From NCBI GenBank assembly GCA_976226885.1, contig OZ320317.1, positions 77,996,001 to 78,060,000 on the forward strand: DNA of 64,000 nt, written 5' to 3'. The notes below the pieces were generated by a model. That model saw only the letters and a list, made by a program, of their open reading frames with translations, was not told the DNA's origin and did no database searches. Positions 331 through 47,700 of the stretch are shown piece by piece. This DNA is from Iphione sp. A-MEVVRFRX5. Lineage: Eukaryota. Each line of letters starts with the position of its first letter. Within the stretch, counting starts at the first letter, position 1. A program made the translations under genes and the position numbers.

Positions 331-435
331 TCCACACGGTGGAAAACGCTTTGATTAGGGCGACCAGATTGAGAAATTTATTCTCATTCTCATTCTCAAC
401 CTAAACAGTAATGAGGGCTAACGACTGCCACTCAC

Positions 436-1998
436 CTCGCCCCTACGGAGGGCACATAGTCCGCAACCACTCGCAGAACCTGGTCGAAGGTGGCCGTCTG
501 TCCATTCTTGTTACCCAGCACCCTGAACGTGTAGTCCCCGGGACTGAGTCCCGCCGTGTTTACCACCCAGCTGCTGCCCGTGTGGGAGAAGAGGCCCGTC
601 ACTTCCTGGTCACAAGCCGAACCAGCCGGGAAGTGACCCTCGGTAGGGTCGCCAGTCACAACTAGGCCAATCTGACAACAATCATAGGCCTTGGTCAACA
701 GAAAGGACACTCAATGCAAATAAGGTTTCAGGCAGGTTTCGATACGCCGACTGTTTTCTGGCGTTCCATAAGTATAGGAATATACATGTCGTTGAAATAC
801 CCAGAAATATTAAACGTACCCCGAAATGCTGGGGGGGGGGGGGAATCGCCCCGATGCTTTGTAGCATATGTGCTTGCTTCCAATATTAACACTCCTGTAC
901 CAGAAGGAGCCAACTCATTTCTATACCACAGAACATCACCTCCTCGGTTTCAATCTCGATTGAAGTGTATTGTGAAAACAATGCATTTGTATTCATATGA
1001 ACGACCAGGTGCTACGAAATCTAAGATAGAATACGGGTCTGTCCATTACATCAGGGCAACAGTGATATGCTTGAAATTATCCTACTAATTAGTGACGTGC
1101 CGGTGAAGGTTTCAGGAACTATACTACATGCTCGTGTAAAGTAGCTCAATATTGTCGTGAGACAATGAGTCAGTCACATACACACACAGCTTACCTTGCA
1201 GGACCAGGAGAAGGTGATGGGCCCCTTGGAGGAGGTCTTGTCACTCAGGTCAAAGGAGAGTTGGCCTGCATCGAGCAGTTCGCCCTCCCGTCGACCCTGC
1301 TGTACCACCCTCAGGTCACCCCCGCTCAGACGCACCTGAAGCTGAGACTTGAGCAGCCCCATGTACAGCCAGTCGGACGTCTCGTTCAGCGTGCCGAGCA
1401 GCTCGATCTTGAGCTTGTACAGCCCTGGCTCCAGCACCTTGGTATCCTGTGGCCAATATGGTTGAATGAGAGGATCATGGCCAGTGCAGATGGGAGGTGA
1501 GAATGGTTGTAGTTAATGGTGTTTAGGTTTGATAGGTAGAACAAGAAGAACATGGGAATATTTGAACAATTAAGGTCATTGGTCATCAAATCTTGATCCA
1601 TCGAATAATCCTCGTGCAGGAGCCGTTCGGTCTGTGAAGTAACTCTTGTACTCAGGTTATGACTGTAATGGCTCGCTAACAGTATCTTTGTTATGAATCT
1701 ACGTTTACAATAACATAAACCAAAATGTTAACCTTTATTTGTAGAAAGTAACTTCGACCGCCATTGTAGTAGTCGGTGGACAATAGGGTGAGAGCAGTTG
1801 TTTCCGGCTCGGCCCCCGACCCGGACCCGGAGCCGTCCGTTGAAGGTTCGGAGACGTTGGCGATGTACCAGCGATAGAGTCGGTTTGAGCTACATGAGCC
1901 ACTCACCAGGGGTAAAACCTCCAGGTTACCCACACCCATAAAGAGCGGCGTAGTGATGTCCTTGTAGGAATCCGGTAGAGAGAGAGATACGCAGTTTT
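436..1998 (-). CDS. REJ module N-terminal part, exons 1733-1998, 1195-1446, 436-671
   Basis: NCVSLSL..SGSC..YRWYI..|[41 protein letters not shown]|..[28 protein letters not shown], resembling the REJ-region motifs of polycystin-1/REJ proteins. Confidence 0.75.
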
Positions 1999-11700: not shown

Positions 11701-14700
11701 AATTCCTACTTCTAAAAAGGGATCTGCAATCCCTTTTAATACATGTACTTTTGTTCCTGTATGACATATTCCACGTCTCTTCTAATAAGAAACATAGTAC
11801 CAAGAGTTACCTCATTGTTATAGTCAAAATTTGGCATTTTGACATGCATATGTATATGTTTATCCACTTTAGTTTATCCACAGTATCCCCTGGTCATGCT
11901 TGATAACGCGCTGATTTGACCAGAAAAAAAGAAGCGCCCGCATTATTGAAGGTGCAAGAAGAGGTCAGATAAGAGGCATTTTGAGTAAGGAACTTATGAA
12001 GCATGGAAAGAAGGTGCACGGAGGGACAGGATAGGCATGTCAGGGATGACCAAATGCAGCAACAGGGAGTTATCGCAGGGTGAGGGAACTGGTTAAAAGT
12101 TAAAAAGCAAAGTTGCGAGAAAAGGTGTCAGGAAAGGTCCAGACATCCAAAGGAACCAAGGAAAGGTTCAAACAAAGCCGCGATCAAAGGTAAGTTTATA
12201 TCCTAGTCTGAGAGAGGGGGTGCGACAAGCAGGTAACTAAGGGATGACTGAGGGAAGATATGAATTAAGTTCGGGTGTCAATTGATAAAAATAACGATGT
12301 GGCTGTGACCGTGAGGTGGGCCGAGGAGTCACAATTTAAACAATCTATATATTTCTTTGAGATTTTTTAGGATAATTGTTCTTTACGGGGGAATATATAT
12401 GGTCTCAGTGCTGGCGTTACACGCGCCCCGTTGTCGGTGAACCCCCGACTCGATCCGTCCCCGAAGGCGGAAGCTGATGGAATCAACGTGCGAGAGAGGG
12501 CGCCAGCAGTGTAGCCCTGGCCCGCCGCAGTGGCCAGTGGGACCACCCAGTCGGCAGTGGCGGCCCCTGCGTAATCAAGCCCAACTACCTGGCCGGGCTG
12601 TACCTGAAATGAGATTGATGTGCATGTGCATATCACTGATCTGCCAATTGAACGCATCCAACAATTATGGATAATCATAACGAACTAACAGCTACAAACA
12701 GGCATGTAGGGCGAGCTTAAAATCGAGCTGGGATATAACCATTTGGATCCACTTCATAAGCGTGGGTCTCGATCTTTTTATTCTTTTTATCGCCAACGCA
12801 AACCAGTTACCATGCGAGGAGTAGTCTTAACCATTAACAAAGTATAACTTACCCAGAACCGTTCGCTCTGGTTCACGGGCGCATACGTGATATTGTCCAG
12901 CGGAAATCCACCACCGTCGCCGTGGATGTCGCCCGCTGTCAGGTGACTGGCGCCCACCATGTGGTACTCTCCACTGACGCCGGTGCTGGCCTGCCAGAGG
13001 GACGCACGGAAACTTCCGGTCTGGAGTGGATAGTAGCCCCAGCCCGCAAGGACGCCCTGCCCGGTCGTCCCGAGGTCGGCGTAGAGGCGAGCAACTCGGT
13101 CCCCGCTCCCTCCAAGTTCAGTGAGCAACAGGTCTTTCGGAGAGAAGTACTTGGCAACTGGGGAGAAAGGATTTACAAGGCACGTATAGAGCAGTACACT
13201 CGGAGAACAGATTAAGTTCTTTATTAAAGAGAAAGATCCTCCCATTAAAATATATAGGAAGGGGTATAGACAAATGTGAATAATAATACATAACAGATTG
13301 AGTAAAGGATGTCGATTATATACGTATAAAGATAGGCACCAGAAGAAAATGTTGATTAAAGAACCAAGACCAAGAAGAGTTTCAAAACCAGTTGTATGCA
13401 TAATTTTGTTTATGGAGTAACTTACGAGAAATGGGCATTACATCAATATACCCTGCTGCCTATGTAAAGTACAAAACTCTAGCATAATACCTTTATTGCC
13501 GTTACTTGTAATTATTATCGAAGTAGGCGAGAAGCAGGACAAGATTAAAAGAAACAGACAAACACGGAGAAACAGCCAGACAGAAAGATAGGCTTATGTT
13601 CGTACGGAGAGGCAGAGACGAAGATAAATTGTCACACTTCTGGTAGAATCCTTAAAGCTTGTGTGACTTTTTTCATGTATGTTTAATAGGTAAATTCGTA
13701 TATATATATATATGATTTACCTGGTGGAGCCCTGTATATACAAGGGATGCCAGGGGCCACCCAGGTGGAGAGAAGGATACTAATGGCATCGTTTTGAGGC
13801 GCCTCAGTAGTGCCGACTTCGTTGGTTTGACAAGGGTCGATATATGTGGTCGTGATTTCTGCGATTTCTGAGTGAAAGGAAACAAATAGAAACCACAGCC
13901 AATATAACGGTTATTTAGTTAATTTCTTTTCTTAAAAAAATAGATGTAGTATGAGCCAAAATGAGGTGAAAGATGATATAGGCAACGCAATGTAAGGCGC
14001 AAAAACGGCATTGTTTGTACTTGCATACATTAACGTTAAATAAGTTATTTTAACTGTGCTCGTTTACAAGTCATATTTCGGATAACGCTCTCTTTACCCT
14101 TTTACTGTTTTTCGAATGCTAATTTTCATTAGAATACAAAGAGGTTATCTAAAAGTCAAGAGGCCATGCAACAGAGACGACTCCACTACATGAGTTCATG
14201 TTTCTTACCGCCTCCTGTTACAGTTTCCATGGTGCCGGTGTACACCTCTTCAGTATACAGAGAGGGTGTGGCTAGCAAAACAGAGAGAACATATTCTAAT
14301 TCATATTCAGGCATTGTTTGCGTGCTGGGCTCTCGATGTAACCATAACTGCACTACGATATTTAAAGGAGTACACAAGTAATAACGTGATACCACTACAT
14401 TGATGTATTGGCCTGACTTGCCAAAAATTCACATTACTATTTACTAAAATTCCCTACATATTCCAGAGTGGGACAGCTATACTATTACAATTATCATAGT
14501 CTACTCTTGATATCTGACTTCACCTGTGTGTGTCTTTTTTGGTATCCTTTCTCTGCTAAAAATATATTTTGTAATGAAGCCAGCGTGACCAAAATGTGTA
14601 GGATATCGCAAGGTATGCAAGGTGAAGTAAATATAACAACTAGCTCTCAAGCAAATGAAGTAGTTCTACCTGCTCGTGTGGTCCTCGATGTTGCATTAGT

Positions 14701-17700
14701 GTAGAATCTCCCTATTTTAAAGAATGATAAAGATATTAATTTAGAACCGGTTAAAATGTCATTAGACCCACGTCAAAACGTATAATCATGTAATAATACC
14801 ACTCTGGAATTTTGCCTTTAATGTGAAAATATCTTATAATTCATAAATGTATTCAATCACCTTCAGGAATAAAATACTACAGTGGTGAAACCCCATTATC
14901 AGTATTTATGCTGATGAGCGAAGTTGAAAAACTATTGGTTATGTATGAGGACTTCTTCTCTTACAGTTTTATGGCAGTGCGAGATTAAGACAAGTATTAT
15001 TTTATGTTTTGCACTTAATGTAAGGAAAATATATACCAGACATGGAAGATGATGAGGTGTGTTTTTTCTCAAATGCACGTATCAAAACTATGCTTTACCT
15101 GCTGTTGTCATCTTTGCCACACCTAAAAGGTTCAATCAAAGACATCTTTCTTATTTTGTTCATATGGTTTTCTTAAATATAAAATTCTGTTCACATTGTT
15201 GATGGCAATACTGAGCAAGTTATTTAAACAATACCATTGTGAGACTGCATGTATACTTTGCACTTAATATAAGCAAATATACCAGAAGTGGAAGGTGGTT
15301 AAGCGTGTTAGTTCAAATACATGAGTTGAGATTATAGTTTACCTGCTGTTGTCATCTCTGCCAAACCTGAAAGTTTGAATTGAAGGCATTTTTCTAATTA
15401 ATTATTATGGTTTACTTACATTTAAAATAGGATTCATCTTGCTGATGGCAAAAGTACTGCATAAATAAATCATTGCCTGAAAATAGTTTCATGGCGGAAA
15501 TATTGTCATATTAGGCCAGATGTGTATTCCTACACCTCCTTTTTGGACGCAAATGCCCATATGCACTAAACCAGAAATTGCAAACGTAAACATTTATACC
15601 AGCTTGGTTGCATATTTTCTATAACGTATCTTCTAAACAGATGGATTAAAATCCCTCAGAAAGATATTACTTCAGCTAAATTATGATCAACAACCTTGTA
15701 ATTTTGAGTAGATTTTGGTACAGCAGATACTCGCCAATGTCTACCAAAGTGTAACTGTCCCGTTTCTAAATGAAAAAATCAAATAAAGGCAGCCAGTTCA
15801 AGTGCTGAAGGTGCTTGTATAAATAATACCAGTGTTAGACCTACATAAGTATTTATTTACATTTTTCACTTAGGGTAGGCAAATATATGAGAAATATAAG
15901 GTCATAATTAAGTGTGTTAGTTCAAATATGTTGATTGAGATTATGCTTTACTTGCTCCTGTCATCTCTGCCAAATCTGAAAGGTTCAACTCAGGGCATCT
16001 TTCCTATTTTGTTCACATGGGTCACCTATATTTAAATCAAGACTCACCCTGCTGATGGCAATGATACCACAGTATTTTCAAACAGCATGATTGTGAAAAG
16101 CATTTACGTTACTTACATTATGTAGGCAAATATACCAGAAATGAATGTTGGTTTAAAATTGTTCGGTTGAATACATGCATTGAGATTACCCTTTACCTGT
16201 TGTTGTTGTCTCAGCTGAATCTTGGAGGTCTTTAAAAATAAGACAAAAAAGTCTTTTTCATTATAGGGAGATGGATGTAACATCATTCAAGTGCTGAAGG
16301 TGCTTGTATAAATAATACCAGTGTTAGACCTACATAACTATCTATTTACACTTTGCACTTAAGCTAGGCAAACATATCAGAAGCATAAGGTCCTTAAGTG
16401 TGTTAGTTCAAATTTGTCAATTGAAATTATGCTTTACCTGCTGCTGTCATCTCTGCCGAATCTGAAAGGTTCAATTCAGGGCATCTTTCCTATTTTGTTC
16501 ACATGGGTCAACTATATTTAAAACAGGATTCCACCTTGCTGATGGCAATGATACCACAGGATATTCAAACAACATGACTGTGAAAAGTATTTAAATTACT
16601 TATTTTATGCAGGCAAATATACCAGAAATGAATGTTGGTTTAAAATTGTTTGGTTGAATACATGCATTGAGATTAAGCTTACCTGCTGTTGTTGTCTCAG
16701 CTGAATCTGGGAGGTCTTTAAAAACAAGAGAAAAATGTCTTTTTCATTATAGGGAGATGGATGTAACATCATTCCCCATCTCTAATTACAGTTATCTATG
16801 CTTTCATAGTCTTCTGTAAATGTCTGGTAGATCATTCTGAACAGAATAATTGATACTGTGAGACCTGTAATAGAAAACTTACCCAGCGGAAAACCTTACT
16901 AGGAAGGTAACTTTAAAAGTCAGGGCAAGGTTGGCTGGTCCCAACATTAAACACTGCATGAAAAAATTGCAACTCTGTTAACAAGGAAAAGCTAAGCTAC
17001 GGGCAGAATTGACTAGTCCCTCCGATGGCCGCACCCCAGGTTTTCCCTTGTAGTACGATCCCATAGAATCGTTCTATAATAATTATCAATAATTATAATA
17101 ATCATTGTAAAAATTATGATAATTATAATTATTATAATTATTATAATAATTCTATTATAATTCACTGCATCGATGTATTGGATGTAAGACATGTCAGCGT
17201 ACCCATAATCCCACAGGAAGGATCGGCGTTGATGACCCTGAAGACGCTGTAACCCAGTGAGTCTGTCGTCACGTTGACGTCACATCTGCTCGTGCAGTTG
17301 AGCACCTCACAAGTGCCGCCGTGGAAGTTAAATGCATTACCACAGATGTCTCGTGTCCTGTTGGCGCATGCGTCTATGTTGTGATTTCCGTAGATTATCT
17401 CCAGTATAGGGCATTGAGAGCGAACACCGTCCCGCACTGTGTACAAACGCTGGTAGTTCTCCGCCTTGAACGCTGGAAGGACAGACGTTTATGTCTGGTG
17501 TCAGTTGATATGCGGAGATGCTCACAACTGTCTGTGGTAGAAGGTAGACTTCCTGCAAGAACTCTAATCCTGGTGAGAGGACGTCCAGGCACCCTATATA
17601 GCGAGACATTTATTACTTGCTTTCCAATGGACGCGTACTAGGTCTGAATCTTTCTGAAAAAAAACATTTCTGAATCTTTTAGAAAAAGAAAACATATCAT

Positions 17701-23700: not shown

Positions 23701-26700
23701 ATATTCACTTTCTGAATCTGAACGGTGTTATTTAGTATCAAGACATTAAAATAATACTCAAAAACTGAATGCTCATCGAAGCATTTGCACCTCCAGGAGT
23801 TGGCTGGTGTTCACTGTTCTCTCACCAGTTAGGTATGAATCAAAGGGTTTAGCTACTCATTGCATTTTTGCGCCTCCTCCAGGTGTTGGCCCCCAATCGC
23901 CACTCTCTCACCAGTTCACTATAAATCAAAGGGTTAAGCTACTCATTGAATGTTTTGCACCTCCTCCAGGTGTCCACTACTGATTTTCAGATGAATTTGA
24001 CTAAGTTTTGCCGATTTTTGGATCAATTTGGCTGAGTTGCACCAATTTGCAGACGAATTTGGCTGTATTTCACCAATTTTTGGACAAATTTGCTTGAGTT
24101 TCACCAATTTTTGGATGAATTTGGCTAAATTTGGCCGATTTTTTGACGGATTTGGCTGAGTTTTGCAACTATTCAAAATCCAAAATATCCGAAATCCATA
24201 CGTTTTTGTCTGAAACAGTCTGTGTTTGGATTTGAATATCCACTGTATGAGCATAGTTCCAGTAGTCTCTGTCCATTTTCATTCAGCTTGCCAGTCCCAA
24301 AGTGGCCAACATAGCAGGGTCAAGAGACATGGTCAGTTCCAATCTAGGCATTGAAGTCCCCAAGTAAGTGCAGACATTCTTTGGCTGGGATTTCCTTGAT
24401 AGCAGCTTCCAGTTCCTCATAACATTGGACCTTTGCCTCAGTGCTGGACCAGAGTGTAGGAGCATAGACATTCAGGATGTTCACATGGCCTGATGAGCTG
24501 GAGAGATGGAGGGAGATGATTCTTGCTGATCCTCAGGATGGTGGTTCAAATGCAGACAGCAAGGTATTCCTCACTGTGAATCTAACATCATGTATGCAGG
24601 GCTCCTGTGGCTCCTTTCCTAGCCAGTAGTATGTGTAGTCCTGTTCTCTGATGCTGCCCTTTGATGATAGCCTGTTCTCTTACAGAGTGGTGATGTTGAT
24701 GTTGAGCTTCTGGAGTATATTAATGATGATGCCTGTTTTCCTTGTATTGTCAACTTGTTGCAGGTCATCAGAGAGGCCAGGGCACTGGCAGTTTAGTTTG
24801 CTGTTTTGTTGTTTTGCCTGGTGCATGTGTTTTCAGTTTGCTCTTCAGTGTTTCCCTAATCCCAAAGCACCCATTGGAGCATGCAGACTGTTATGGGTCA
24901 GCACCTTACTGGCTGGGGGCTGCCCAGCTTGAAGTGGGTGATAGCTGACCAGTGGGACACAATGATCCCTCCCACCATTGGAGACAGCCCGTAGCATCCA
25001 AGCTCACACTAATATGCTCTAGACTTACAACTCCTAACTGCTGCCTCCCATGTTATTTCTGTCTTTATGGCAGTGGCACTGAAGTGACCTCCCTAGAGTG
25101 AAAAAAGCCTGGGTAGTGTGTATGGCAATCCTGGGGTGCCAAGCCATCAGGATCCCCCTATTGGCCTCACTGGTGAAGTCCAAAGGAGTGCAGAGCAATA
25201 CATTTGGCACCAGGTTGGCTGCAGGACTTGACAGAATGATGCTTGTGGACTGGCAGTCATCTGCCTACATAGCTCCACTCCTGATTTGAAGGGTTTACTC
25301 CCCTACACTTGGCCGTTGGATCAGTTGAAGATCTCCCCCGTTCTTTAGCTGTTGGCTGCAAAAGCGGCTCCTTCACCTAGTGGTGCTTGGAGCCAGCACA
25401 TGAGAGATTTAGGAGATGGATGAAGACAACTAATAACACTCAGATAAATATAGCAGCTCCTTAGTCTCTGATTGGCTTAATGGAGTGGATACCGGAGTAC
25501 CTTAACAGAACAATCATATGACCTGCTCTGGTGCATATCAGGGTGCTCAAATATGCATTACCAATTGTCTTGAACTGATAGTCCAGGGTCACGACCCCTA
25601 GCGGGATAGGACCTATCTCTACTGCACTGTGATAAATGGTTGTTAAAAACGTCCATTTCTAGAAATAGGAAGAAAGAAAATCTGAAACATTGGCTTTGCA
25701 CTGAGCCTATAGCGTAATAGTAATGTGTTAGATAATTTCTGGTCAAAAAATTATCTGTGTAAGGGAGTATAACAACACTAACAGGCCCTCTGACTGCGGT
25801 CAAACTGGGATAGAGTAATGGGAAAGACAATTGTCAGAATATTAGGTAAATGTTAAATGTAAATCAGAATTATCACGTATGTATAGGTACAATTACATAA
25901 TCAGTTGGATATTGATATTTGGCTTAAAGATCACAGATCACAAGTCTTATGGCAGGTTCATACATATCAGTTATGCTTGGGGCTGATTAACCCCTGGCAT
26001 ATCATGTCGGCTTCCATTACATTCACTATATCTTAAATTTTTGAATAATTATCCAACGATCAGTGAGAACCATGCTAGGTGGAGATGCCCATGGTCCCCA
26101 CTACACTCAGGTCTGGATGGGAGTATTCTCTACCACCCTTCTGTCTTTGCTCTTGTGTTGTTCACCAATCCTGGGGTATTTAACCCTATCCTGGCAGTTG
26201 ATGCCCACAGGCACTCCCAGCCGAATGATGGGTGATGCCCACGGGCACTCCGGGCGAACATCAGGTGATGCCCATGGGCATCAAATGCACTATTTTATTT
26301 CACATAGTGATTTAATATAGAAATAATACTATGAATTTAATGATTTTTGGAGAGAATAAAGACAACATATTATGGGATAATTTAAAATTATAGGTGAGCA
26401 TTGATTTTTAGAATGAATGAATATTATGATGTACTTTCAAACGAAGTGCGCTTTCTGCAGTGTTCACATGGCACATCTTGGAATAGGCAGCTGACAACAT
26501 TGGCGCCCTGAGCTGAATGCATTCAATAAGGCTTCAAAATGGACTCAGATGATGGTTTTTCAACTGCCAACACTGATTGGGTGGAGGAATTAGATCTTGC
26601 TGCATTCAAGCTACTGAACAATGGAGATTCTGATGAAAGTGATCAACCAGAGACATTAGATGAAATGAACAATGAAAAGAATGACATGAACAACAATCCT

Positions 26701-29700
26701 GGCTCTTCAGACAAAGACAAGCCACTTGGAGCAGTGGTGAAGAGAATATCAAGAATGAACAATGGTTGGTTCAAAGTCCATCAGAAAAAAGGTCCTATCC
26801 CTTCAGAAAGCTCATTTACAGAGAGGACATGCATATCTGAAGAAGTGGATCTGACAAAAGTGAAGAAGCCCTCAGATTTCTATGGTCTCTTCGGGAACAG
26901 TGATTTCATCTCGAAGATTGTCACCAACGTGAACAAACGGGCAGAAGTTGAGAGAGAGAAGACATATGCAGGACACAGGGCCAGGTGGATACCATTCACT
27001 CTATGAGATATTGTCAACTTCATAGGATTATCTATCATCATGGGCATCATAGTGAAGTCCACCCTGCAGATGTACTGGACAAAGTTGGAATACCTGACTA
27101 TGCCAGTTTTCTCTCAGTTCATGTCGATATCCCATCATTACCTGACAATACATAGTACACTGTTGATGATACCATAATTCAATATTCAATGTGAAATTCT
27201 GACAATTTGGTGTTTTCCATGATAATTATTGACTTATTTCTAATTGCAGCTACCTGAACGTATGTGAGGATACCAAGGGGGCCAACCAGGCAGACCAAGC
27301 ACCACATCCATCAGAGAAAGTCAAGTGGCTATTTGACTATTTCAACCATATGGCAAGGAAGCTCTACACTCCACGACAGCAGGTATCAGTTGATGAAACA
27401 GTAATAAAGCACAAAGGATGACTACGATTCAAACAATATTTGTCCAATAAGCCCAATAAGTGGGGAATAAAATGCTGGGTGCTAGCAGAAAGCTCAACAG
27501 GTTATGTGTGTCGATCAGATCCCTATTTTGGAGAGAAGATAGGGGTGAGCTGTCACTCTCAGAGCATGTTGTCTTCAATTTACTCAAAAAGGCAAAAATT
27601 CTTGGTAAACACTACAATGTATACATGGACAACTTTTTCAGTAGTGTACCGCTGTTTAGAAAACTATTGCAATATGCTACCTATTGCTGTGGAACATTGA
27701 GGCTGAACTGTTCTTGGCTTCCCAAGAATCTGATGAAGAAAAAAATGAAATTCTTGAAGGATACAGGTTCTATGTGTTTTGCCAAAAAAGATGATCAATT
27801 GCTGTCAATTTGGAAAGATAAACGCTTGATTCATGTACTGTCTACAATTCATGGTGCCTTCACCTCAACAGTTAGAAGAACTGTCAGAGATTCTCAATCG
27901 GACAAATGTATGAAAAGGGAGGTGGTCTGCCCTGTTGCAATTTCAGATTATTGTTCATTTATGGGTGGTGTAGACAGGCCAGACCAGTTGTATCAGCATT
28001 ACAATTTCTGCCGCAGGTCTAGCAAATGGCCAGTGAATATGCTATGGTACTGCCTAGAGGTGATGAAAATAAATGCAATGATTATGTACAATGAAACTGT
28101 TGCCAAAAAAATGAGTCTATTGGATTTCACTGTAGAAATCATTCACAGTCTTCTCACTACCCCTGAATCAGTCAGTCAGTCTATCGTAGCAGGTGAAGAA
28201 AAGAGGCTCAAAGTAGGTGTTTTCCCTCAGATCTGGGAAATAAGAGTTTTTGTAGAGTCTGCTACAAACGATTTGTCAATGGAGTCCAAGCAAGCAAAAG
28301 CCAAACTAAATATGGCTGCAATGATTGTGGTGTTCATCTTTGCATGCCTCATTGCTTCACTGTATACCACACTGTCAAAGACTATGCAAAGCATTATGTT
28401 GAGGAATGAAGAGTGAAGTGAAGCAACACCTACCGGATTATGAAAAAAAAGAAAATTGAAATAAATGTGCATGACTTACCTTGATCATGACTTCTTGTAT
28501 ATTGTTTAATCCAATTAATGAAATATCCTTATTTGTTTCATAATCCATATTGTATTTCCTCGTCATTACATCCAAACGTATATATCCTCATGTGAGTTTA
28601 CATCCAGTATATGATGTAACATGTAAATGATCCATAATGAATGTAAATCCAAATGACACTCCACAAAAATCCATATTTATCATCTAAAAGTTATTTAAAA
28701 GAAGACTCCCTAACCATTTTCCCCTAGGCAATTGAATAAAAATAATTTAGAAGGCTTAGATGTCCCCGAGTTGGCCGCGCGTATAATCCGTTATGACGCT
28801 CCGCTATGCCCCCGCCACCTAAAGAGAAGTGTCAAAATTAACCCGCTGCATGAGTGCATGACGTACCATCAGGTGCCGCATGGATAGGGTTAAGGGGGAT
28901 AAACTCGCGGACATAAGTATGATTTAGATGATGAGTCACTCCGTTAAAACTTGATAGGTATGCCACATTGTGAGAGTTACTTGGTTGTGACTTACGTGTA
29001 CTGGGGATTGCCTTGTTCTCACCGGACAGTCTGGTTGTTGGCGCAGTGGTTTACAAGTGATTATTCTCGGTATACCTGTAGATTTCACCTTCATTTGGTG
29101 TGAGGGAGCCTTTTTGCAGTGGAGATCAGTGGGTGGATTCCCCTCTAAAGTTTTAAGCATCGAGGGCATGATCGAGTTTTGCTTAAAGCATGCTGCACTA
29201 TTCGTTTCAGAGTCACTATTGGAGTAGCTCGATACCTTGTGTTCACAGCATATATTGTCATCACAACTGAGTTCAGAGTCACTGGGCAGTAAGCGTGTCT
29301 TGATGCGATGGTGTGCAGTTTTCACTTTGGTCTGGTTGTCGTCAGATCTAGTGTGTGCTGTTCTGTTCTTGTCTAACTGCACTAACGGATGCACGTCTTG
29401 GATTTGTGCATTTTGCCTGGTCCGGTGTTTGCTGTGCCTTCTCCTCCATGCTCGTCTTTCTGGTTGAAGTCTTGGGAGTGTATGGCATGTGTGATGGTGG
29501 TGTTGTGGTTGATTGTTGTGGCTCCTCTTCGGCATGGGCGGCAGTCGCCTCTGTAAATGGGAAGCATGTTAGCTATCTGAAATATCACATTGTTGGGTGT
29601 TATCACGTGTTTGTTGGTTTATTGCTTGTAGGTTTAGGTTTATATTTTGGCGACAAGCTGAATTTTTTACTGCAAAGGCAAAACCATGGTAGGATGTTTG

Positions 29701-38700: not shown

Positions 38701-41700
38701 GGGGTCTTATAATCCTCAGGGAGATGTCTAACCTGTGCCCAAGTTGGTTTCTCTTCCTGCTTTTCATATAGCTGCAGTATAGGCCCTATAGACTCTATCT
38801 TGTAGCTGTTTACTACATTTCTCCTTAAATAGCGTTAGAGGATTACCAGCAGTATCGAGCTGTGACCTCGTCACAACTCGCACAGTCATGTGTTCGTCAT
38901 GTTTACCTCCACATTGCTTACAAGTATTGTCCTCCTGCCTGAGGAAATCCCAGCACCCTTTTCAAGCTGTTAAATGCTGCCTCTTGCCCTCCAGTCCATT
39001 CAAACAGCCGACTTTTGTTGATCAGCTTCCTGAGTGGGACTGACATTGTAGCAAAATCAGGTGCATAGGTCCTGTAATAAAAACACATTCCCAAGAATGT
39101 CCTGATTCCTGTTAAATCAGCTGGTGGTGGCCATTCTTCAATAACTTGGATTTTCTGTGAGTCAGTGGATATCCCTTCCTCCCTCACGATATGCCCCAGG
39201 AAATTCATGTGCTTCAAGAAGAAGTCACATTTCTTAGGTTTCAATTTCAACCCAGCATCCTTCAGGCACTGTATCACTCTCCTAAGTCTAGCTATGGTTT
39301 CTTTAAACGTCTTCCTGAAAATGCGAATATCATCTAAATACACCAAGCATCCTTCCAGGTCAAACCATGCAAAACCACATCCATTACTCTGTCAAATGTG
39401 GCTGGTGCATTCACCAGTCCAAACAGCATCACCATGAATTTAAACAGTCCCAATGGGGTCACAAAGGTGTTTTTTTGAAATTTCCTTAGGTTCCATCTCC
39501 ACCTGCAAAATATCCACTGGCAAATTCCAACAAACAGAAATATTGAGCCCAAAGCACAGCGTTGAGTGAGTCATCTATATTATGCAATGGATAGGCATCC
39601 TTCCAAGTTACCTCATTCAGCCTATGGTAATCAACACAAAACCAAGTTGTTCCATCCTTCTTACTCACCATCACTACAAGGCTGGCCCATGGGCTAACGG
39701 TTTCCCTTATTACCCCAGCCTATAACATCTCCTGCACAAGCTTTTGTTCTTCCTGTCATTTTCTTAATGGCAGGCACCTCACCCATTGCATAATAGGTGG
39801 ATGTCCTTCCACATCAATTGGATGTTTTATGATCCCAGTCTTTCCTATGTCAGTTCCACCAGTGGAAAAGGTGTCCTTAAAGTCTAATCATATTTGTCTG
39901 AGTAAAGCCCACTGATCCTCCAACAGGTCTTTCTGGGAATGTTGATACAGGTCCTGCAGGTGTAATCCTTACTTACTTTAACTTCACCTACTCTATTGTC
40001 AATTTTCAACATGATTTTATGGACATTTTGTTCCAACTCCACCTCCTTTCATGAATAATTGATAACAGCCCCTTTATCCAACAGGAAATCATTTTCCAAA
40101 ATTGAATCTTCTTCCACATCAGTGAAGATGACTGGGGCCTCATAAGTTTGTCCATTAGCCTTGAATTTTACCATCCCTTGCCCTAGAGTTGGAATTACCC
40201 GACCTGTAATACTCATCAGTGGAAGCCGTGTTCTTTGGACTTGAGCTAGAGGAACTTCTTCTTTAGCCAATGAAACCTCAGCTCTTTCGATTATCAATCT
40301 TTGCCAGTAAATACAATCCAGTTCCTGCTACTGTGCCTATGCATCTGTCTGGCCTGGTGGCTACTTAGTGTTTTCCAATTTGTTAACCTCTTTCTTTTCT
40401 CTCCGACTTCAACTTAGGGCAGTCTTTCTTAAAATGTTCCTCAGAATCACAGTACCAACAATCGAATTTCCCGTCTGCATTTCTGCCCTTTACCACTTTT
40501 TCCTCGGCTTGATTAGCCAATTTCTTTTCATTACCCTTGTGATTCTTACCCTGCTTCACCACTTTTTGAACTGCCAATTTCTCCTCATATTCCTACTTTA
40601 AGATCTTAACATGATCAGCAAAAGCAGCTTCTGTCTGAGTGGCTCGAATCTTCTTTGGACTGGCATATCTTTCTTCCTTTTCTATGATCCGAACTCCCTG
40701 TTCAAGTGTATTAACATCACTGAATATACATTTGAGTTCCAATTTGTCTCCGAGGGCTTGCTGCAAGAAAGCTACTGAGAAAGAATTTCATGTCTCTCTA
40801 TCCATATCAGGGTAAATCCCATGCATACATTTGTGCACCTTGTCTGCCAACTCCTTAGGACTCTGGTTCCTTCCTCTCCTCAGCACGGTGAGTTCCTGAA
40901 CAGCTCGGACTTTCTCCCATCCCCTCCCAAACCTGTCCAGAAGGGTCAGCATGCACTGCTGGTTTGTAGAGGTCTCCACAGAGATCAAATCACTGGGAAA
41001 GATTGTACTGCCCCTGTCAAAGACAATATCAACATGCTTTTCTTCATCTCTTTGTCCCAGTTGCTCACCCATGCCCATTCCTCAAACTGTGAATGCCAAC
41101 CTTCCAAAGGCCACTTTTCCATTGTACGGTTCCAGCTTGATCAGCCCAAAACAAGAGGACGGATTCAGTTCTTCCAGGGCAGATTTTCTCAGTAATCTGA
41201 AATGTCTCCTCTAAGGCCACGAAGGCTTGCTTGGTTTGAGTGCCCACTTCCCTTGTTTACGTTGGATGCACATGAACTCACCAAATTCCTGAATCATCTC
41301 ATCCCAGGCTGAGCTTGGTTGTTCTTTCTTGACCTACCAACTGGGACTTGCCATCGGGGCTGTCTCACTCAGATGAGCAGGGTCTGAGGTAAATGTGGAT
41401 TGATGGGCAGCATCTGCTGTCCTCCAACTCCTCTCAGATTCTCTTGTGGGCACCTGCCTTCATCTATGTGGAATGTTCCCTCTCTGACTCCTCCTGGATT
41501 CACTCAAGGGTGTTGTGGCACTACCGGAGGTCAGTATCCCACTGGGTCCATCCCTGCAGGGCCAGGGGTGATTGGCTGAAAAGGAGTTCTACAGGGATAA
41601 ACCCATACTGGTCTTGCAGGTGGAGGGTAATTTTCATCCTCTTCCGTGTCCTCAGAAGGAGGTGGGGTAGGAGCAAGATGCTCTCCAAGCCCTTGTACAG

Positions 41701-44700
41701 TACCCGACCCTGCACAGGGTGCAGGGGCAGGTGTTTTTTCCTGGTCGTCCTCTGAGCCTAAGTCTGAAGGATCGCCCCAACTTGTTCAACTACCTCATAT
41801 CCCTCCTCAACCTCATCCTCTATGGTTGTATAGTCCAAATCTGATCTTTTCCACCCCTTAGCTGAGTAAGTCTCCCACTCCTGACAGGGGTAGGCTCTCT
41901 GCTATTAACTCCATCTCCGTCTCAGTGTCATGTTTCCATCACTCATTAGAGGCTCTGGATCTGCAAAAATGTGAAGATTCATCCTCTACTTGAGTGAAGA
42001 GGATCTCACTGCTACCAGCTAAACGTAACATGTCTCTGGTCTCGGATGTGTGAAGGCTTCGCAAAATAAAAACTGTCCACACAAGATATGCATTTGGTGT
42101 CACTGTCTTCAAGTGCAGTTAGAGTCTACAATACAGTGTACTTACCAAACTCAGCAGACTGGCCAATGTAGGTACTACCACTGCCGCCGCCATAACACCA
42201 ATAATTCAGTGGCGCATTCCTGTTATGACAGGTACCATGGTGGCATGGATTTCTTATCCCGCAGTAATTCACTAAAAATATAAACGTGTTTTACATAGAG
42301 TGTTCTACTGAAGAATTTACTAATGTATAACGTACCCTGCCTATGCATTACTAGCTTGCGTTTTGTTACTAAAAGTGCGATAATGAAACGAAATCAGCAA
42401 ATGGCATCGGTCCCATTTAGAAATTACATACGGAATACTGGATGCATTGTGCAATATATAGTTCTATTGACTGGTTGAGTCAATGATATGACATTCACTT
42501 AGATCCATCATATTGAAGTCACTTTACAATACAAGTGCCGACAAATTACCAAATTTTTTATTCAGTTAATCCACTAGGACCAGTGTGTATCCTCATGAAT
42601 GCATCACACTTTCCACATTATATTTATCGCAAAGGGTATATGCATGCATGGAAATGTAGACAATGCCATTCATTCTTATTAAAATATTTTATATTATATG
42701 ATTATTTTATTAAAATAAAGATTATGTACAGTTCATTCTTAGGAATAATTTTGTGAGATCAAATATTCCTAGGGAACGAATGTTTAAGGTGCATCACATG
42801 ATCTCTTTCGGGGCTCTTATCAGCTGGTCTTGGAGTAAATACTGATATACTGATAACATTTTTTTCCCATCTGCTATCCAGTATATATGGTACACTGGTA
42901 CTTTTGGGGATCCTAGCGCAGTTTTTACTTCTAAAACTTCATTAAACAGGTCTGAAGTAGACTTTTGGGTTCTTACCGCGTTCACATGTGGCACCATATG
43001 CCCAAGGAGGACACTCGCAGAGGTAGGAACCGTCAGGCTTCAACTCGCAGGTTCCGTTGTTCTGACAAGGGCTCGCATCACAAAGGCTGGAGTGAGCTGA
43101 GAAATAGAGAATAACTAACCTCTATAGAGGCAACAACTAATATATGAATAATTCGCGATGTGGAGATGGTGTATGTGACATGTTAGCCTCTGGCTCAAGA
43201 GACATGGTTATTGAGGGTTGTGTGGATCAAATATATTTTAAAGGGATCTATTAATGCATAGCACCGGAAGCCCTAAAAGGTTAGATAACTTTATCATAGA
43301 AGGGAATAATTATGTAAGATTTGACTGTGTAGAATGAGCTTCACTGTCCTTATACTTCAATTAGGAATTGTATTGGATAGAATCAAACCACAAAGTCTTT
43401 TATTATGTCCTTATGTAGTTGATATATTAACATGATGATGTACGAGACAGGCAATTCATGTGAATGTAAAGCATGGTGGAGTGATCAAGTGTTCGTGAAC
43501 ACCCAACGAGGACTTACCCTAATTCAAAGTACCATCATTTCAAATGAACAATGTGCCGACTATGCCAAGAGGGTTAGATCCCATGAATCAACAGACAAGT
43601 GTTTTTTTGAATAATGAACACTGCTTGATTACATTGTCAGTTAGGTCGTCTGATTCTAAATTTATGACAATTTTACATGTTGCTGGAGGTTATGCTAAAA
43701 ATTACTCTGATTCTTGGAAATACAGGGAAAAGGAAATCGCAAAATTAATCTTCTATTATACTCAAAGAAACTTGAAAGTGAGTACCAAAGCCATTATTTT
43801 CTTTTAAATTGATTATAAAAGGATACAAAAATAGAAACCTAGGAAATATGGCAGGAATAACATACTGTCCTAATTTTGTCTACCAGTTTTGTAATATAAT
43901 GCCTTGTAGGCTTATTTAATTCAAAACAGGTATCTCGGCCTCATATAATACATGTACTTCAGCTCTACACCCTCTAGTTATACTGTGCGTGTATGTAACT
44001 ATTATTACATCAATGAAACATGAGGGATGCTGAGCGCGACGCCTGAGTCTAAAACCATCTAAGCATGCCTTCTTCATGACAAAACTACTTAACTGCTAAA
44101 ATACCCTTTCCTTTGATACGCGAATCTCCGCCAACTTACGTTCGAGAAGCAAAGGCTTAACTGCCAGGGACATGAGGTCGGCGCTGGAATCGAACTCGTA
44201 GATGTTCCCCACTTTGAGATTATTGATCGCCACCTCGTTTTTGCTTACGGTCCTCGAAAGGTCATCAGAGGTCAGACCGGTATCCGTCAGTGATCCGTCT
44301 GCTTTGAGGCCGGCAACGCAGTATACGGTATTGTTGGCGTAGTAATGGATGCCAACGATATGTCCTTTCTGCACTGGTGTGTGCGCTATGTAAACAGTTC
44401 CTCGGGTCCACCGGTAATATGTGGCATGTGCCAAGGACACCACGCGATAGCGGTTAGCTTCTTCCAACGGCTGCCAGACGCCTATGGAGAAGCTTCCGCA
44501 GTAGCCTCTAGAGCGGTACTCCCAACCGACCAGCGTGGCGCTAGTAGCGAATGCCAAGTCTAAGAAGAGGGTGCTCTTGACGGGGCCGTAGTACTGAGGG
44601 TTGCCGGAGAGGTAGGTGTAGGGGAACTGCCACCCTGTTAGAAGTAGCAGACGGAAAATGTATTCAATCTCGTCTTGTTCTTTGTCATATTGAGACTCAT

Positions 44701-47700
44701 ATATATTCTCAGGATGTACAATGTAAAGATATGAGTATAACATATGATCAAAGAAAGATGACATAAATTAAAATTGTTTCATCCAAAGATGTGACAAGGG
44801 TTAAAAGTTACAGTGTGGGAATATATATTTAGACAATCTTTGTATAATGTATATGGTTTATTGATTTAGCTTTAGATAGGATTAAAAAGTTTGAAAAATA
44901 GGTACACCTATTAGGAGGAAGCTAAACAATATGCCCTTGAAATGCCAATATGTGAGCTGTGTTGTTTGTCAAATTCTTGGAAAACTCTTTATTGAGTGAT
45001 GGTTCTGACAATAAACAATTTCAATTCAATTCAATTCAACGGCGAATATGTCCAACAACTTCTTTAGCCTTGTGCTGTACAATCTTTGAAACTGGACACG
45101 TAGTAGAGTTATGATCTACTTTGACCATACTCCTTTCCATTTGCTAGAAGATTTTGTTTATAAAACGTCCAGTGGAGAGAGACACCGTTACCGTTACACC
45201 TACCTGGCTCAATTACCCAGTAGGTGTCGTAAGCATGTGTGGATGCAGTATAGCTCATTTCGGTGGGTGATGAGCATCTGTACACGAGGCAGAACCTACT
45301 GGACCTGAATAGGGATGTCTACATTAATCTGGCATTCAATAATGAATTCACTGATGGAAAGTCACTTAATGTTGCCTATTGTAGAAATGCTCCTTGATAA
45401 TGGTGGAACCCTATAAAAAAAAATCTATGTACATAACTGCATGTCTATGCAAGAAAATGTAAGCCCACTGTACAGGTTGTCTGTCTTCCTGCTTCGATTT
45501 CCTTCGCCGTACAATATGAATTACTTGCACTGTTATGTGTGTCTAACGACATACACATGATATTGATGAGTTATTATCACACTTGTGATATACCTACCCG
45601 AAGGAGAAGACGTTGGAACCAGAGTTAGCGAAAGCAGCTTCATAGCAATCTCTGAAGTATTGTTTCGTACCCGAATGCATGGTAGTGCAGTTTGACGGCA
45701 CCTTTTTCTCTCCCCCTTTTACCAGGTTATAAAAGCGAGGCTCTGGAAAGCCAACATAGACAGAGACACAGGAAAATATGTAAATTCACATGGTCTACTT
45801 CTTTTAACGTGCATTTGAATTAGCATTACTATCCGATATTTTTTTCAACAAGGATAACCACAATCATGTACGAGGAGGTCGGTGCAGAAAGACCATTCAA
45901 CTATAGGTCGGCAACCCCAGGGAGAAGGTATGTCTTCTTGAACTCAGTAAAATATAACACAAGTATCGAGGAAACACACCTCAGGAGGAAGGGCAACAGT
46001 TCAGCTCGATCAGTACTAGCCGCTTCAGTAAATGGCATCAAAAGACATCTACAGTCAAACGCCTATTTGCGACCGTACCAAATTTCAACCATTCTCGCTA
46101 ATACGACCACCTGAGCGTGGACCAGAAGTGCTAGATTGTCATATATCTTTGATCAGTACGCGACCATTCCTACTAATGCGACCACTTGAGCTCAGACCAG
46201 AGTGTTGGTTGCAAATAGGAGTTCGACTGTAGTCAAAACATGTCAATTTTTCACATTTGCACGTCATTGCGTGCAGTACAAGTAACTGTCATTGCATTCA
46301 ACAAGACTCCCGGGATGGGGGTGGGGTGGGGGGGGGCGCGGGGTGGTTCCTACTGCTAATATCACTGATATTACAGGAAATGTCATGTCTATTTGCACAC
46401 CCTCTCTCCAGGGCTGTCTTTTGGTTCTTCATATATGACTCTACATGATTGCATACTGTTAAAGGTCATTATAGGAGCCGATGATGGATGTATCTAGGCA
46501 AAACTTATATTTTATAACATTTATATGTATTTGTTAAATGGAACACGCAAACCTCTAACTCAATCGTTTACTGGATCTCAAAACAGGTTCTTGTGAAATA
46601 ATACAGAATCTTTGAAAACCATCATCTTTTCAGCACTCACCGTTCTCACAGTTAAAACCATTGTACTGTAATTGACAGGAACAGTAGTAGGAGTAGCCCC
46701 CATAGAAGACGCACGTACCACCGTGTAAACAGGGGTTGCTTTCACAGGGATCTGAGAAGGAAGGACAATCAGGGGTGAACATTTTCAAAGGCAAAGGTCG
46801 ATTATTCAATTATTCGATGTGCAATTGATGTGGTTAGTAGGTATAGCTGCATAGAGTAGTGCTTCCCCCAGTTGCTGTCTGTGTCATATCATGAGACCTT
46901 ATCATACCCACGGTTACATGAGAGAAAGACAAATATATTTACGTCTTTCAAAGACCTATCATTAACAATGTTCAATATTAACCCTAGCTAGGAAATGCAT
47001 AATGGTAACCATTTTCCCAATTTGTATACGCTAATCAGGCTTAACCAAAAAATATCTGTGTTTCCAGTGTCCTGACAGACCCTGATTTTTTGACCTAATG
47101 GACCTTTTATTGTTTTGTGAACATCTTCATAATCGATAACGCTACAGATATATGTAATACACCATCGTATTTCTTGTTGACTTTCACGTGATATAGAAGT
47201 GCTGGGGTCACTGAAATCCAAGCATGGACCTACCAGAGCTGTACACCTCCACCTCGCAAATCTCCATGCTCACATTCAGGCCCGACGAGTTCACCTTGAT
47301 CCCCACGAACTTTCCCAGCAAAGGCATGTTACATGTGATGTCATGAGGAACATCGGAGCTGCTGGAGAACTCAAACAACCCGCATAGCACAAAGGATTCC
47401 ACCTGCCATGCGATCTGGTTGAAGTTGTTGGTTACCACCACGGAGACGGTGAAAGGTCCGGCGGTGGCTACAACGAAAATGCGAAATGTGCTCTGAAGGT
47501 TCCCTCCGACCAGTACGTAGATGTTACTAATAGATATATGATGCATCCTCGCTTTTGGACAGTGTCGCTTACATTGTATATCCCCTTTTACCACCGTACA
47601 AGCAAAATATCGAAGTACTTCAGGTCGTATAAGAAGCTAGATATATTGGATGGCTATGTATCCTCGACTGCATTGCTACACATGCATAAGTAAGATTGGA

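What the first reader, a model, noticed from the sequence alone, without database searches (positions are those of the whole stretch)
15099..16706. Array of six 24-nt in-frame microexons hidden in an intronic-looking tandem repeat: a candidate splice-tunable mucin-like stalk
Seen: each of six ~245-bp repeat units contains on the gene strand an AG|24 nt|GT cassette (16683-16706, 16438-16461, 16197-16220, 15952-15975, 15343-15366, 15099-15122). All are phase 1-1 like the flanking exons and stop-free: [48 protein letters not shown]. Every cassette ends in G or A, so no skip combination creates a stop or frameshift (64 combinations). Cassettes look more conserved than their flanks (A vs B 22/24 nt; flanks about 60% by eye) and include synonymous changes (TCA/TCG, GCT/GCA). 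The downstream 147-nt exon starts with a related octapeptide, [11 protein letters not shown] occurs about 20 nt upstream of acceptors B, C and E. Established: symmetric microexon arrays generate isoform diversity (e.g. Schistosoma micro-exon genes), Thr/Ser-rich linkers are typically O-glycosylated stalks, and UGC near the 3' splice site is the SRRM3/4-type microexon enhancer. Inference: tandem duplication of an exon plus intron unit built a variable-length spacer between the PAN and X domains, adjustable by splicing and by repeat copy number. The ORF track and standard gene finders would miss it.
Basis: partly seen in the sequence, partly recalled or inferred. Interest (0 to 1): 0.88.

Follow-up and report, generated by a model that had tools for sequence, protein, structure and literature searches.

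The report
Six repeated 24-base exon candidates
Inside one intron-like stretch of a large worm (annelid-type) cell-surface receptor gene, a small exon-plus-intron unit has been copied several times, giving six in-frame 24-base exon candidates that would lengthen a threonine-rich linker between two protein domains; they look selectively kept, but there is no RNA evidence that they are used.

Summary
The six AG|24 nt|GT cassettes are at the stated coordinates on the minus strand. All are phase 1-1 and stop-free, and they give the stated peptides.

**Structure of the array**
- It is four old units (A, B, E, F; 60-78% alike) plus a younger 486-bp duplication (90% identical) that turned A-B into A-B-C-D.

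**Evidence for real exons**
- Among the old units, the cassette plus its GTAA donor is the conservation peak of the repeat.
- Only 2 of 187 control windows keep four equivalent columns without gaps; none keeps all six.
- Splice-site scores fall within the range of this gene's own exons.
- Phase 1 is the only frame open in all six copies, and it is the frame the flanking PAN/apple-fold exon and downstream exons need.

**Evidence against or missing**
- Since the young duplication the cassettes have diverged as fast as the intron, and every cassette change is non-synonymous.
- Codon usage is uninformative.
- No homologue, transcript or ortholog could be found.
- The UGC "enhancer" is one inherited trinucleotide in three copies.
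- The peptide contains no proline, so "mucin-like" is a loose description.

**Verdict:** most likely a tandem exon-intron duplication that extends a Thr/Ala/Glu-rich linker. This is a new member of a known kind. Use of the cassettes in splicing is unproven.

The parts
17203..17472 (-). 270-nt phase 1-1 exon encoding a PAN/apple-fold module (ends ...PSCGIM + G)
   Evidence: The only open frame is phase 1. Codon log-odds +34.7 in phase 1. AlphaFold model pLDDT 79. Foldseek top hits are plasminogen N-terminal PAN, factor XI apple, SML-2 and the HGF N domain. No Pfam PAN hit.
16683..16706 (-). Cassette A, 24 nt, (D)SAETTTA. An alternative acceptor at 16715 gives a 33-nt exon, (D)[10 protein letters not shown].
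   Evidence: AG|24|GTAAGC. PWM acceptor 7.4 and donor 9.1 bits; the 33-nt acceptor scores 10.0.
16438..16461 (-). Cassette B, 24 nt, (D)SAEMTAA
   Evidence: tttcag|24|GTAAAG. PWM acceptor 4.4, donor 7.1.
16197..16220 (-). Cassette C, the young copy of A, (D)SAETTTT. An alternative acceptor at 16229 gives a 33-nt exon.
   Evidence: Differs from A at 1/24. PWM acceptor 3.0 (6.9 for the 33-nt form), donor 6.6.
15952..15975 (-). Cassette D, the young copy of B, (D)LAEMTGA. Ends in A, so its donor is CAA|GTAAAG.
   Evidence: Differs from B at 3/24, all non-synonymous. PWM acceptor 3.8, donor 4.5, the weakest donor of the six.
15343..15366 (-). Cassette E, an old unit, (G/S)LAEMTTA
   Evidence: tttcag|24|GTAAAC. 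PWM acceptor 1.5, donor 6.3. 21/24 identical to B and 22/24 to F.
15099..15122 (-). Cassette F, an old unit, (G)VAKMTTA
   Evidence: ttttag|24|GTAAAG. PWM acceptor -2.1, the weakest acceptor; donor 7.1.
15797..16774 (-). Young tandem duplication, 486-bp unit x 2 at 90% identity, holding A-B and C-D
   Evidence: TRF period 486, 2.0 copies, 90% matches. 48 differences in 493 columns. Cassettes plus splice flanks differ at 10/104, the same rate.
15481..15796 (-). Unique ~320-bp stretch interrupting the array, inside the 585-nt D-to-E interval
   Evidence: No similarity to the repeat unit or to anything else in the window.
14670..14711 (-). Doubtful 42-nt phase 1-1 exon, [14 protein letters not shown]
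   Evidence: AG/GT and phase fit, but the acceptor scores -3.6 and the codon log-odds are -1.6.
14209..14271 (-). 63-nt phase 1-1 linker exon, [21 protein letters not shown]
   Evidence: Acceptor 4.2, donor 8.6. Codon log-odds +7.3 in phase 1 only.
13721..13867 (-). 147-nt phase 1-1 exon starting EIAEITTT..., the octapeptide related to the cassettes
   Evidence: Translation. Codon log-odds +13.4 in phase 1 only. Joins in frame to the next exon.
12853..13160 (-). First exon of the 'X' beta-rich module (VAKYFSPKD...SERFW)
   Evidence: Acceptor ccccag| in phase 1, donor TGG|GTAAGT. About 35% identical to 50132-50317 in the same gene. No Pfam hit and no database homologue.

Best explanation
The array is a local tandem duplication of a complete small exon together with parts of both flanking introns, inside a large modular extracellular gene on the minus strand. 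That gene carries LamG, F5/8C, about 17 EGF modules, a PAN/apple module, 'X' modules and a REJ domain, so it looks like a PKD1/REJ-type receptor of an annelid-like animal.

Four old copies (A, B, E, F) arose first. A later 486-bp duplication copied A-B into C-D.

Each unit keeps:
- a 3' splice site;
- a purine-rich body of 24 nt (33 nt is possible for A and C);
- a strong CAG|GTAAR 5' splice site.

The units are separated by introns of about 220 nt, which is the normal intron size in this gene. All units are phase 1-1.

Most likely at least some of them are spliced into the mRNA. Each would add 8 (or 11) residues of the type D/G-x-A-E-(T/M)-T-x-A. Together they would add up to about 48-54 acidic, Thr/Ala-rich and probably disordered residues, possibly O-glycosylated. 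These would join the Thr-rich linker that already separates the PAN/apple module from the next domain.

Shown: the sequence anatomy, the phase fit, the retention of the splice sites and the conservation peak. Inferred: that the cassettes are actually spliced in, which of them are used, and any glycosylation.
For: - Cassettes and phase are confirmed.
- Each unit contains acceptor flank, cassette and donor flank, and the cassette plus GTAA is the conservation peak among the old units.
- AG...GTAA at exact spacing is kept in B, D, E and F, whereas only 2/187 control windows (4 columns) and 0/187 (6 columns) do as well. Invariant columns are 77% against 45-54%.
- Donor scores are 4.5-9.1 bits against 6.7 +/- 2.6 for this gene's own exons. 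Acceptor scores are -2.1 to 7.4 (10.0 for the 33-nt form of A) against 5.5 +/- 5.2.
- The only frame open in all six is the one the neighbouring exons need.
- The neighbouring 63-nt and 147-nt exons have clear coding signal and are also Thr-rich, and the 147-nt exon starts EIAEITTT.
- The introns made by the cassettes (217-221 nt) match the 224-421 nt introns between EGF exons.
- The only distant homologue of comparable architecture, P0003, has a PAN-like module followed by a Thr-rich stalk and a hydrophobic stretch that looks like a membrane anchor.
- The array is local and is not a dispersed element within this window.
Against: - There is no transcript, protein or orthologue evidence of any kind.
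- Since the 486-bp duplication, cassettes plus splice flanks have diverged at the intron rate (10/104 against 48/493). All four cassette changes are non-synonymous, and D's change weakens its donor.
- Across all copies the non-synonymous to synonymous ratio is near neutral, so the peptide itself shows no purifying selection.
- The codon-usage score is only +0.4 to +1.3, the 82nd-89th percentile of intronic 24-mers, and phase 2 scores as well or better for B, E and F.
- Pseudo-microexons of similar splice-site quality occur about 5 times per strand in the window.
- Identical splice sites in a tandem repeat can stay silent, as in the human F7 IVS7 minisatellite (PMC1557585).
- Other unchecked notes on this genome report many intronic arrays of amplified exon-intron junctions.
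- The conservation test uses overlapping windows and only three to four independent lineages.
Confidence: 0.57

Rival explanations
1. The array is a pseudo-exon ladder. It would be an intronic minisatellite that arose by duplicating one real or former small exon with its flanks. At most the first unit (A) would be spliced. The other copies would be silent decoys, a neutral by-product of a tendency of this genome to amplify exon-intron junctions.
For: - Young copies diverge at the intron rate, and all cassette changes are non-synonymous.
- C and D have weaker sites than A and B; F has a TAG acceptor scoring -2.1.
- Codon usage is uninformative.
- Silent identical splice sites in tandem repeats are documented for F7 IVS7 (PMC1557585).
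- Four unchecked first-stage notes describe decoy splice-site arrays elsewhere in this genome.
Against: - The old units B, D, E and F keep AG, GTAA and the exact 24-nt spacing far better than control windows of the same alignment.
- The conservation peak lies on the cassette.
- Each unit has both splice sites, not just one junction.
- The length is a multiple of three, and the single open frame matches the gene's phase.
Confidence: 0.3
2. All six cassettes would be independently skippable microexons, regulated through an SRRM3/4-type UGC enhancer. They would give up to 64 stalk lengths of an O-glycosylated mucin-like spacer, further tuned by changes in repeat copy number.
For: - All cassettes are symmetric and any combination stays in frame.
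- Splice-site strengths are graded, which is what alternative exons tend to show.
- A and C have two in-frame acceptors 9 nt apart.
Against: - UGC is present in only B, D and E, at one homologous position. It is TGT in F and absent in A and C. A trinucleotide within 30 nt is expected by chance about one time in three.
- There is no proline in the 48 residues.
- The two 486-bp copies are 10% diverged, so this is not a fast copy-number-variable locus on present evidence.
- There are no expression data.
Confidence: 0.2
3. The repeat is non-coding and has another role or none. The conserved 24-mer would be a protein- or RNA-binding element, for example a splicing regulator or decoy exon that controls removal of the long PAN-to-linker intron. 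The in-frame property would be coincidence.
For: Conservation is at the nucleotide level rather than the amino-acid level, and the cassette body is purine-rich, like a splicing enhancer.
Against: - No Rfam family matches.
- Multiple-of-three length, the single open frame equal to the required phase, peptide similarity to the next exon's EIAEITTT and both splice sites being retained are all unexplained by this reading.
Confidence: 0.07

Closest known systems
Tandem exon duplication (own knowledge: Kondrashov and Koonin 2001; Letunic, Copley and Bork 2002) and internal tandem repeats that change exon number (De Grassi and Ciccarelli 2009, PMC2812944)
   Same: Adjacent homologous exons with homologous flanking intron, equal length and phase. 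Copies often lie unannotated inside an 'intron'. They can add amino-acid repeats or create alternative splicing.
   Different: Here the exon is only 24 nt and there are six copies. They would be additive, extending a linker, rather than mutually exclusive. Use in mRNA has not been shown.
Titin PEVK exons and the spider flagelliform silk gene (own knowledge): iterated exon-intron units encoding disordered repeats
   Same: Repeated small symmetric exons, each with its own copy of the intron, encode a low-complexity spacer whose length can vary through exon skipping or copy number.
   Different: Those exons are about 75-90 nt or larger and their splicing is documented. The array here is tiny, young and lies between two globular domains of a receptor-type protein.
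Schistosoma micro-exon genes (MEGs; 10.1101/2023.06.21.545858, PMC4015677)
   Same: Symmetric micro-exons, multiples of three, whose skipping keeps the frame and could diversify an extracellular protein.
   Different: MEGs are small secreted proteins built almost entirely of micro-exons with long introns. Here a local array with 220-nt introns sits inside a giant modular gene whose other exons are 100-300 nt. There is no sequence relationship.
Human F7 IVS7 37-bp minisatellite spanning an exon-intron boundary (PMC1557585)
   Same: A tandem repeat copies a splice site many times within an intron.
   Different: F7 copies only the donor, and those pseudo-sites are silent. Here each unit carries acceptor, in-frame body and donor.
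SRRM3/4 (eMIC)-dependent neuronal microexons (own knowledge; PMC13174390 for the 3' splice-site mechanism)
   Same: Exon length of 27 nt or less; a UGC about 20 nt upstream of three of the acceptors.
   Different: Those are single, deeply conserved microexons in neuronal genes. Here the UGC is one inherited site in 3 of 6 copies, and neither conservation nor tissue data exist.

Membership tests
Tandem exon-plus-intron duplication array | Two or more adjacent exon candidates that are homologous to one another together with their flanking intron sequence | tested here: met
   Six units. 486 bp x 2 at 90% identity, plus units E and F at 60-78%.
Tandem exon-plus-intron duplication array | Copies keep the same length, the same phase and both splice sites | tested here: met
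   All are 24 nt, phase 1-1, AG...GTAA. The empirical retention test gives 2/187 and 0/187 control windows.
Tandem exon-plus-intron duplication array | Copies are present in mature mRNA | not testable with these tools
   There is no RNA data. Protein libraries hold no product of this gene.
Schistosoma-type micro-exon gene (MEG) | Most of the coding sequence consists of micro-exons, in a small secreted protein | tested here: not met
   The gene spans more than 57 kb, with about 17 EGF exons plus LamG, F5/8C, PAN and REJ exons of 100-300 nt.
Schistosoma-type micro-exon gene (MEG) | Micro-exons are symmetric (multiples of three), so skipping keeps the frame | tested here: met
   24 nt (or 33 nt), phase 1-1. 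No junction creates a stop.
SRRM3/4 (eMIC)-dependent microexon | UGC-containing enhancer just upstream of the 3' splice site | tested here: inconclusive
   TGC lies at -22 to -20 in B, D and E only, at the same homologous position. It is TGT in F and absent in A and C. This is compatible with chance plus descent.
SRRM3/4 (eMIC)-dependent microexon | Neural-specific inclusion and conservation across species | not testable with these tools
   No expression data and no orthologous locus were found.
Mucin-like (PTS) domain | High Ser/Thr content in tandem peptide repeats | tested here: met
   13 Thr and 4 Ser in 48 residues (35%), as octapeptide repeats.
Mucin-like (PTS) domain | Proline-rich | tested here: not met
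   No Pro in the six 24-nt cassettes, and one Pro if A uses the 33-nt form. Ala (12) and Glu (5) dominate instead.
Mucin-like (PTS) domain | Dense O-glycosylation | not testable with these tools
   This needs glycoproteomics.
PAN/apple domain (upstream exon 17203-17472) | PAN/apple fold: a beta-sheet packed on one helix, with conserved cysteines | tested here: met
   Model pLDDT 79. The Foldseek top hits are dominated by PAN/apple modules, TM up to 0.63, with E-values only 6e-3 to 1e-1. Four Cys are invariant in the alignment with distant homologues.
PAN/apple domain (upstream exon 17203-17472) | Match to a Pfam PAN profile | tested here: not met
   No Pfam family at E <= 0.1.
PKD1/REJ-type receptor (the host gene) | REJ domain | tested here: met
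   Pfam REJ scores 25.5 bits (cut-off 25) at 1177-1437. The next profile segment matches at 435-710 and is collinear.
PKD1/REJ-type receptor (the host gene) | GPS site, PLAT domain and transmembrane region | not testable with these tools
   The 3' end of the gene lies outside the window.

The most novel reading that the evidence does not exclude
An annelid PKD1/REJ-type receptor uses a young exon-intron minisatellite as a combinatorial length dial. Six independently skippable 8- to 11-residue microexons would set the distance between a PAN/apple lectin-like module and the next domain. That would be a micro-exon-gene-like diversification mechanism outside flatworms and embedded in a giant modular protein.
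Probability: 0.2. Interest if true: 0.55.

Novelty: new member of a known kind. Interest (0 to 1): 0.33.

Why it matters
If the cassettes are spliced in, this is a clean, datable snapshot of how a protein linker grows by duplicating an exon with its intron. It shows four old copies and one recent two-copy step. It would also be a case that gene finders and ORF tracks miss.

The array would give a simple test system, because a single PCR amplicon reads out every inclusion pattern. That could show whether newly duplicated symmetric microexons are constitutively used, alternatively used or ignored.

If they are not spliced, the array is one more intronic minisatellite with decoy splice sites. Its main value would then be as a caution for annotation.

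Tried and rejected
- **Annotated or transcript-derived product of the gene.** phmmer of the PAN exon against 1.8 billion representatives gave only three weak hits at 31-38% identity. Word-index searches with the X exon and the F5/8C-like ORF gave nothing. Exact look-ups of two window ORFs gave nothing. No comparative or expression test was therefore possible.
- **Codon-usage log-odds trained on this gene's exons.** Decisive for the PAN, 63-nt and 147-nt exons but uninformative for 24-nt cassettes.
- **Dispersed repeat or transposon.** No other copy exists in the window, and the unique insert 15481-15796 is also single-copy. The genome-wide check could not be run.
- **Known RNA families.** None found.
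- **Pfam for the PAN and X exons.** No hits. The PAN fold was recovered only by structure prediction.
- **Single-sequence model of the X-type ORF.** It failed, with pLDDT 34.
- **UGC enhancer and 'synonymous changes' as evidence.** Rejected as arguments for the reasons given in the report.
- **The 42-nt exon 14670-14711.** Its sites and coding score are poor, so it should not be treated as an anchor exon.
Full report
**What is there**

- With one base carried over from the preceding exon they read (D)SAETTTA, (D)SAEMTAA, (D)SAETTTT, (D)LAEMTGA, (G/S)LAEMTTA and (G)VAKMTTA.
- Phase 1 is the only frame open in all six. Phase 0 has TGA in B, D, E and F, and phase 2 has TGA in A and C.
- The neighbouring exons are all phase 1 at the relevant ends: 17203-17472, 14670-14711, 14209-14271, 13721-13867 and 12853-13160.
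- Every cassette ends in G or A, and no following exon begins with AA, AG or GA after a T. No skipping pattern can therefore make a stop.

The core observation is confirmed.

**Corrections**
- A vs B is 19/24 identical, not 22/24. The 22/24 pair is E vs F.
- The UGC about 20 nt upstream is in B, D and E, not C. F has TGT, and A and C have none.
- The array is not six equal units. Tandem Repeats Finder reports a 486-bp unit present twice at 90% identity (15797-16774), which gives A-B and C-D. About 320 bp of unique sequence follows (15481-15796), then two older units, E and F, which are 60-78% identical to the others.
- A and C also have an acceptor 9 nt further upstream (tttttaaag|ACCTCCCAG|ATT).

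**Is it more than chance?**

A bare AG-N24-GTAA occurs about 20 times per strand in the window. Pseudo-microexons with splice scores like the better-scoring cassettes occur about five times per strand. One such motif in a 245-bp unit is therefore unremarkable, and the six copies exist by descent. The informative question is whether the motif was kept as the copies diverged.

1. In a MAFFT alignment of B, D, E and F with 110-125 nt of flank, the most conserved 24-column windows among B/E/F all overlap the cassette and its donor. Identity is 0.86-0.94 there against about 0.6-0.8 in the flanks.
2. Invariant columns are 77% in AG+24+GTAA, 45% over the rest of the alignment and 54% over its well-aligned core (Fisher p 0.0016 and 0.027).
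3. I used every other window of the same alignment as a control. Only 2 of 187 are gap-free with four columns at the 'splice' positions invariant, and none has six. The real window has all six.

The windows overlap and there are only three or four independent lineages, so these are rough figures. They do point to constraint on the splice sites and on the length.

**Splice sites**

I built weight matrices from 19 acceptors and 14 donors of this gene's own domain exons.

| Site | Cassettes (bits) | This gene's real exons, leave-one-out |
|---|---|---|
| Donor | 4.5-9.1 | 6.7 +/- 2.6 |
| Acceptor | -2.1 to 7.4 (10.0 for the 33-nt form of A) | 5.5 +/- 5.2 |

- A is the strongest unit. F has the weakest acceptor (TAG) and D the weakest donor (CAA|GT).
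- The introns the cassettes would define are 217-221 nt, with one of 585 nt. That is similar to the 224-421 nt introns between neighbouring EGF exons.

**What argues against use**
- The two 486-bp copies differ at 48 of 493 columns. The cassettes with their splice flanks differ at 10 of 104, the same rate.
- All four changes inside the cassettes are non-synonymous, and one of them weakens D's donor.
- Across all copies I count about 2 synonymous and 8-9 non-synonymous changes, close to the neutral ratio.
- The conservation is at the nucleotide level. That fits splice signals, an exonic enhancer or a loosely constrained low-complexity peptide.
- Codon log-odds trained on 1842 codons of this gene are clear for three exons in phase 1 only: PAN (+34.7), the 147-nt exon (+13.4) and the 63-nt exon (+7.3). 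For the cassettes they are only +0.4 to +1.3, the 82nd-89th percentile of intronic 24-mers. For the 42-nt exon they are negative.
- Identical splice sites in a tandem repeat can be silent, as in the human F7 IVS7 minisatellite (PMC1557585).
- Four unchecked first-stage notes on other parts of this genome describe intronic arrays of amplified exon-intron junctions. This raises the prior for a by-product. In this window the array is the only large tandem repeat in the gene.

**Context**

The host gene runs on the minus strand across most of the window.
- LamG/pentraxin-like exon at 55.7-56.2 kb and F5/8C-type exons near 32 and 48 kb.
- About 17 EGF exons.
- Repeated beta-rich 'X' modules without Pfam or database relatives.
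- Two collinear REJ-domain exons at 1177-1437 and 435-710.

It therefore looks like a PKD1/REJ-type extracellular receptor. Earlier scan notes place the genome among annelids; I did not test that.

The exon upstream of the array has no Pfam PAN hit. An AlphaFold model built on a four-sequence alignment reaches pLDDT 79. Its Foldseek hits are dominated by PAN/apple modules, including plasminogen N-terminal domain (TM 0.61-0.63), factor XI and prekallikrein apple domains, Sarcocystis SML-2 and the HGF N domain. E-values are weak, 6e-3 and above.

One of its three distant homologues (P0003, 32% identity) has the PAN-like module followed by a Thr-rich stalk and then a hydrophobic stretch that looks like a membrane anchor (read by eye). 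A Thr-rich spacer after this module is thus a natural arrangement.

**The peptide**

The 48 residues contain 13 Thr, 4 Ser, 12 Ala, 5 Glu, 4 Asp, 4 Met and no Pro. I would call this an acidic Thr/Ala-rich low-complexity linker. It is 'mucin-like' only in the loose sense. O-glycosylation of the TTT and TTTT runs is possible but was not tested.

**External evidence**

None could be obtained.
- phmmer of the PAN exon against 1.84 billion representative proteins gave three hits, the best at E 6e-6 and 31% identity.
- Word-index searches with the X exon and with the F5/8C-like ORF 2.8 kb upstream gave nothing.
- Exact look-ups of two window ORFs found no contig.
- No Rfam family matches the region.
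- The available collections hold no eukaryotic genome DNA that can be searched by sequence. The orthologous locus and the genome-wide copy number of the unit remain unchecked.

**Most likely mechanism**

A small phase 1-1 exon with parts of both flanking introns was duplicated in tandem several times, and two units were duplicated again later. Each unit is a self-contained splicing unit with introns of about 220 nt.

I put the following probabilities on the readings:

| Reading | Probability |
|---|---|
| At least some units are included in mRNA and lengthen the Thr-rich linker between the PAN/apple module and the next domain | about 0.57 |
| Largely silent pseudo-exon ladder | about 0.3 |
| A purely non-coding role | below 0.1 |

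**Comparison with known systems**

This is tandem exon duplication, with precedents in titin PEVK exons, iterated silk gene units and internal tandem repeats that alter exon number (PMC2812944).

It works somewhat like the symmetric micro-exons of Schistosoma MEGs (10.1101/2023.06.21.545858), but it fails that family's defining architecture. It is also not shown to be an SRRM4-type microexon.

I rate it a new member of a known kind. Interest is moderate to low until RNA data exist. A single RT-PCR across 17203-13867 would settle it.

Noticed in passing
window 435-710 and 1177-1437 (minus strand): Two collinear exon ORFs match consecutive parts of the Pfam REJ domain (profile positions 50-131 and 152-206). 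The large modular gene is therefore probably a PKD1/REJ-type receptor whose 3' end lies beyond the window.
   Followed up: partly
window 12853-13160 and 50021-50359; probably also 44099-44764 and 52890-53447 (minus strand): A beta-rich 'X' module is repeated in the gene (about 35% identity between two copies). It has no Pfam hit and found no homologue in a database search. A single-sequence AlphaFold model failed (pLDDT 34). It may be a lineage-specific extracellular domain.
   Followed up: partly
It would add three residues (LPD or LQD), so there are two candidate acceptors 9 nt apart.
   Followed up: yes
The 63-nt and 147-nt exons downstream are much better supported.
   Followed up: yes
window about 20500-42000 and 62568-63524: A block of transposon remains lies inside the gene. 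It includes a piggyBac-type transposase (DDE_Tnp_1_7, 27460-28413, plus strand), a reverse-transcriptase fragment (38921-39346, minus strand) and another reverse transcriptase at 62568-63524.
   Followed up: partly
window 23983-24163: A 31/62-bp tandem repeat (about 3-5 copies, 73-76% matches) lies in the transposon-rich stretch. It is unrelated to the array studied here.
   Followed up: no
window 52890-53447 (minus strand): A long open exon-like ORF contains Thr/Ala/Glu/Asp-rich linker segments (for example DVTTEAAD and [10 protein letters not shown]) within a single exon. These resemble the cassette peptides in composition, so similar linkers occur elsewhere in the same protein.
   Followed up: no
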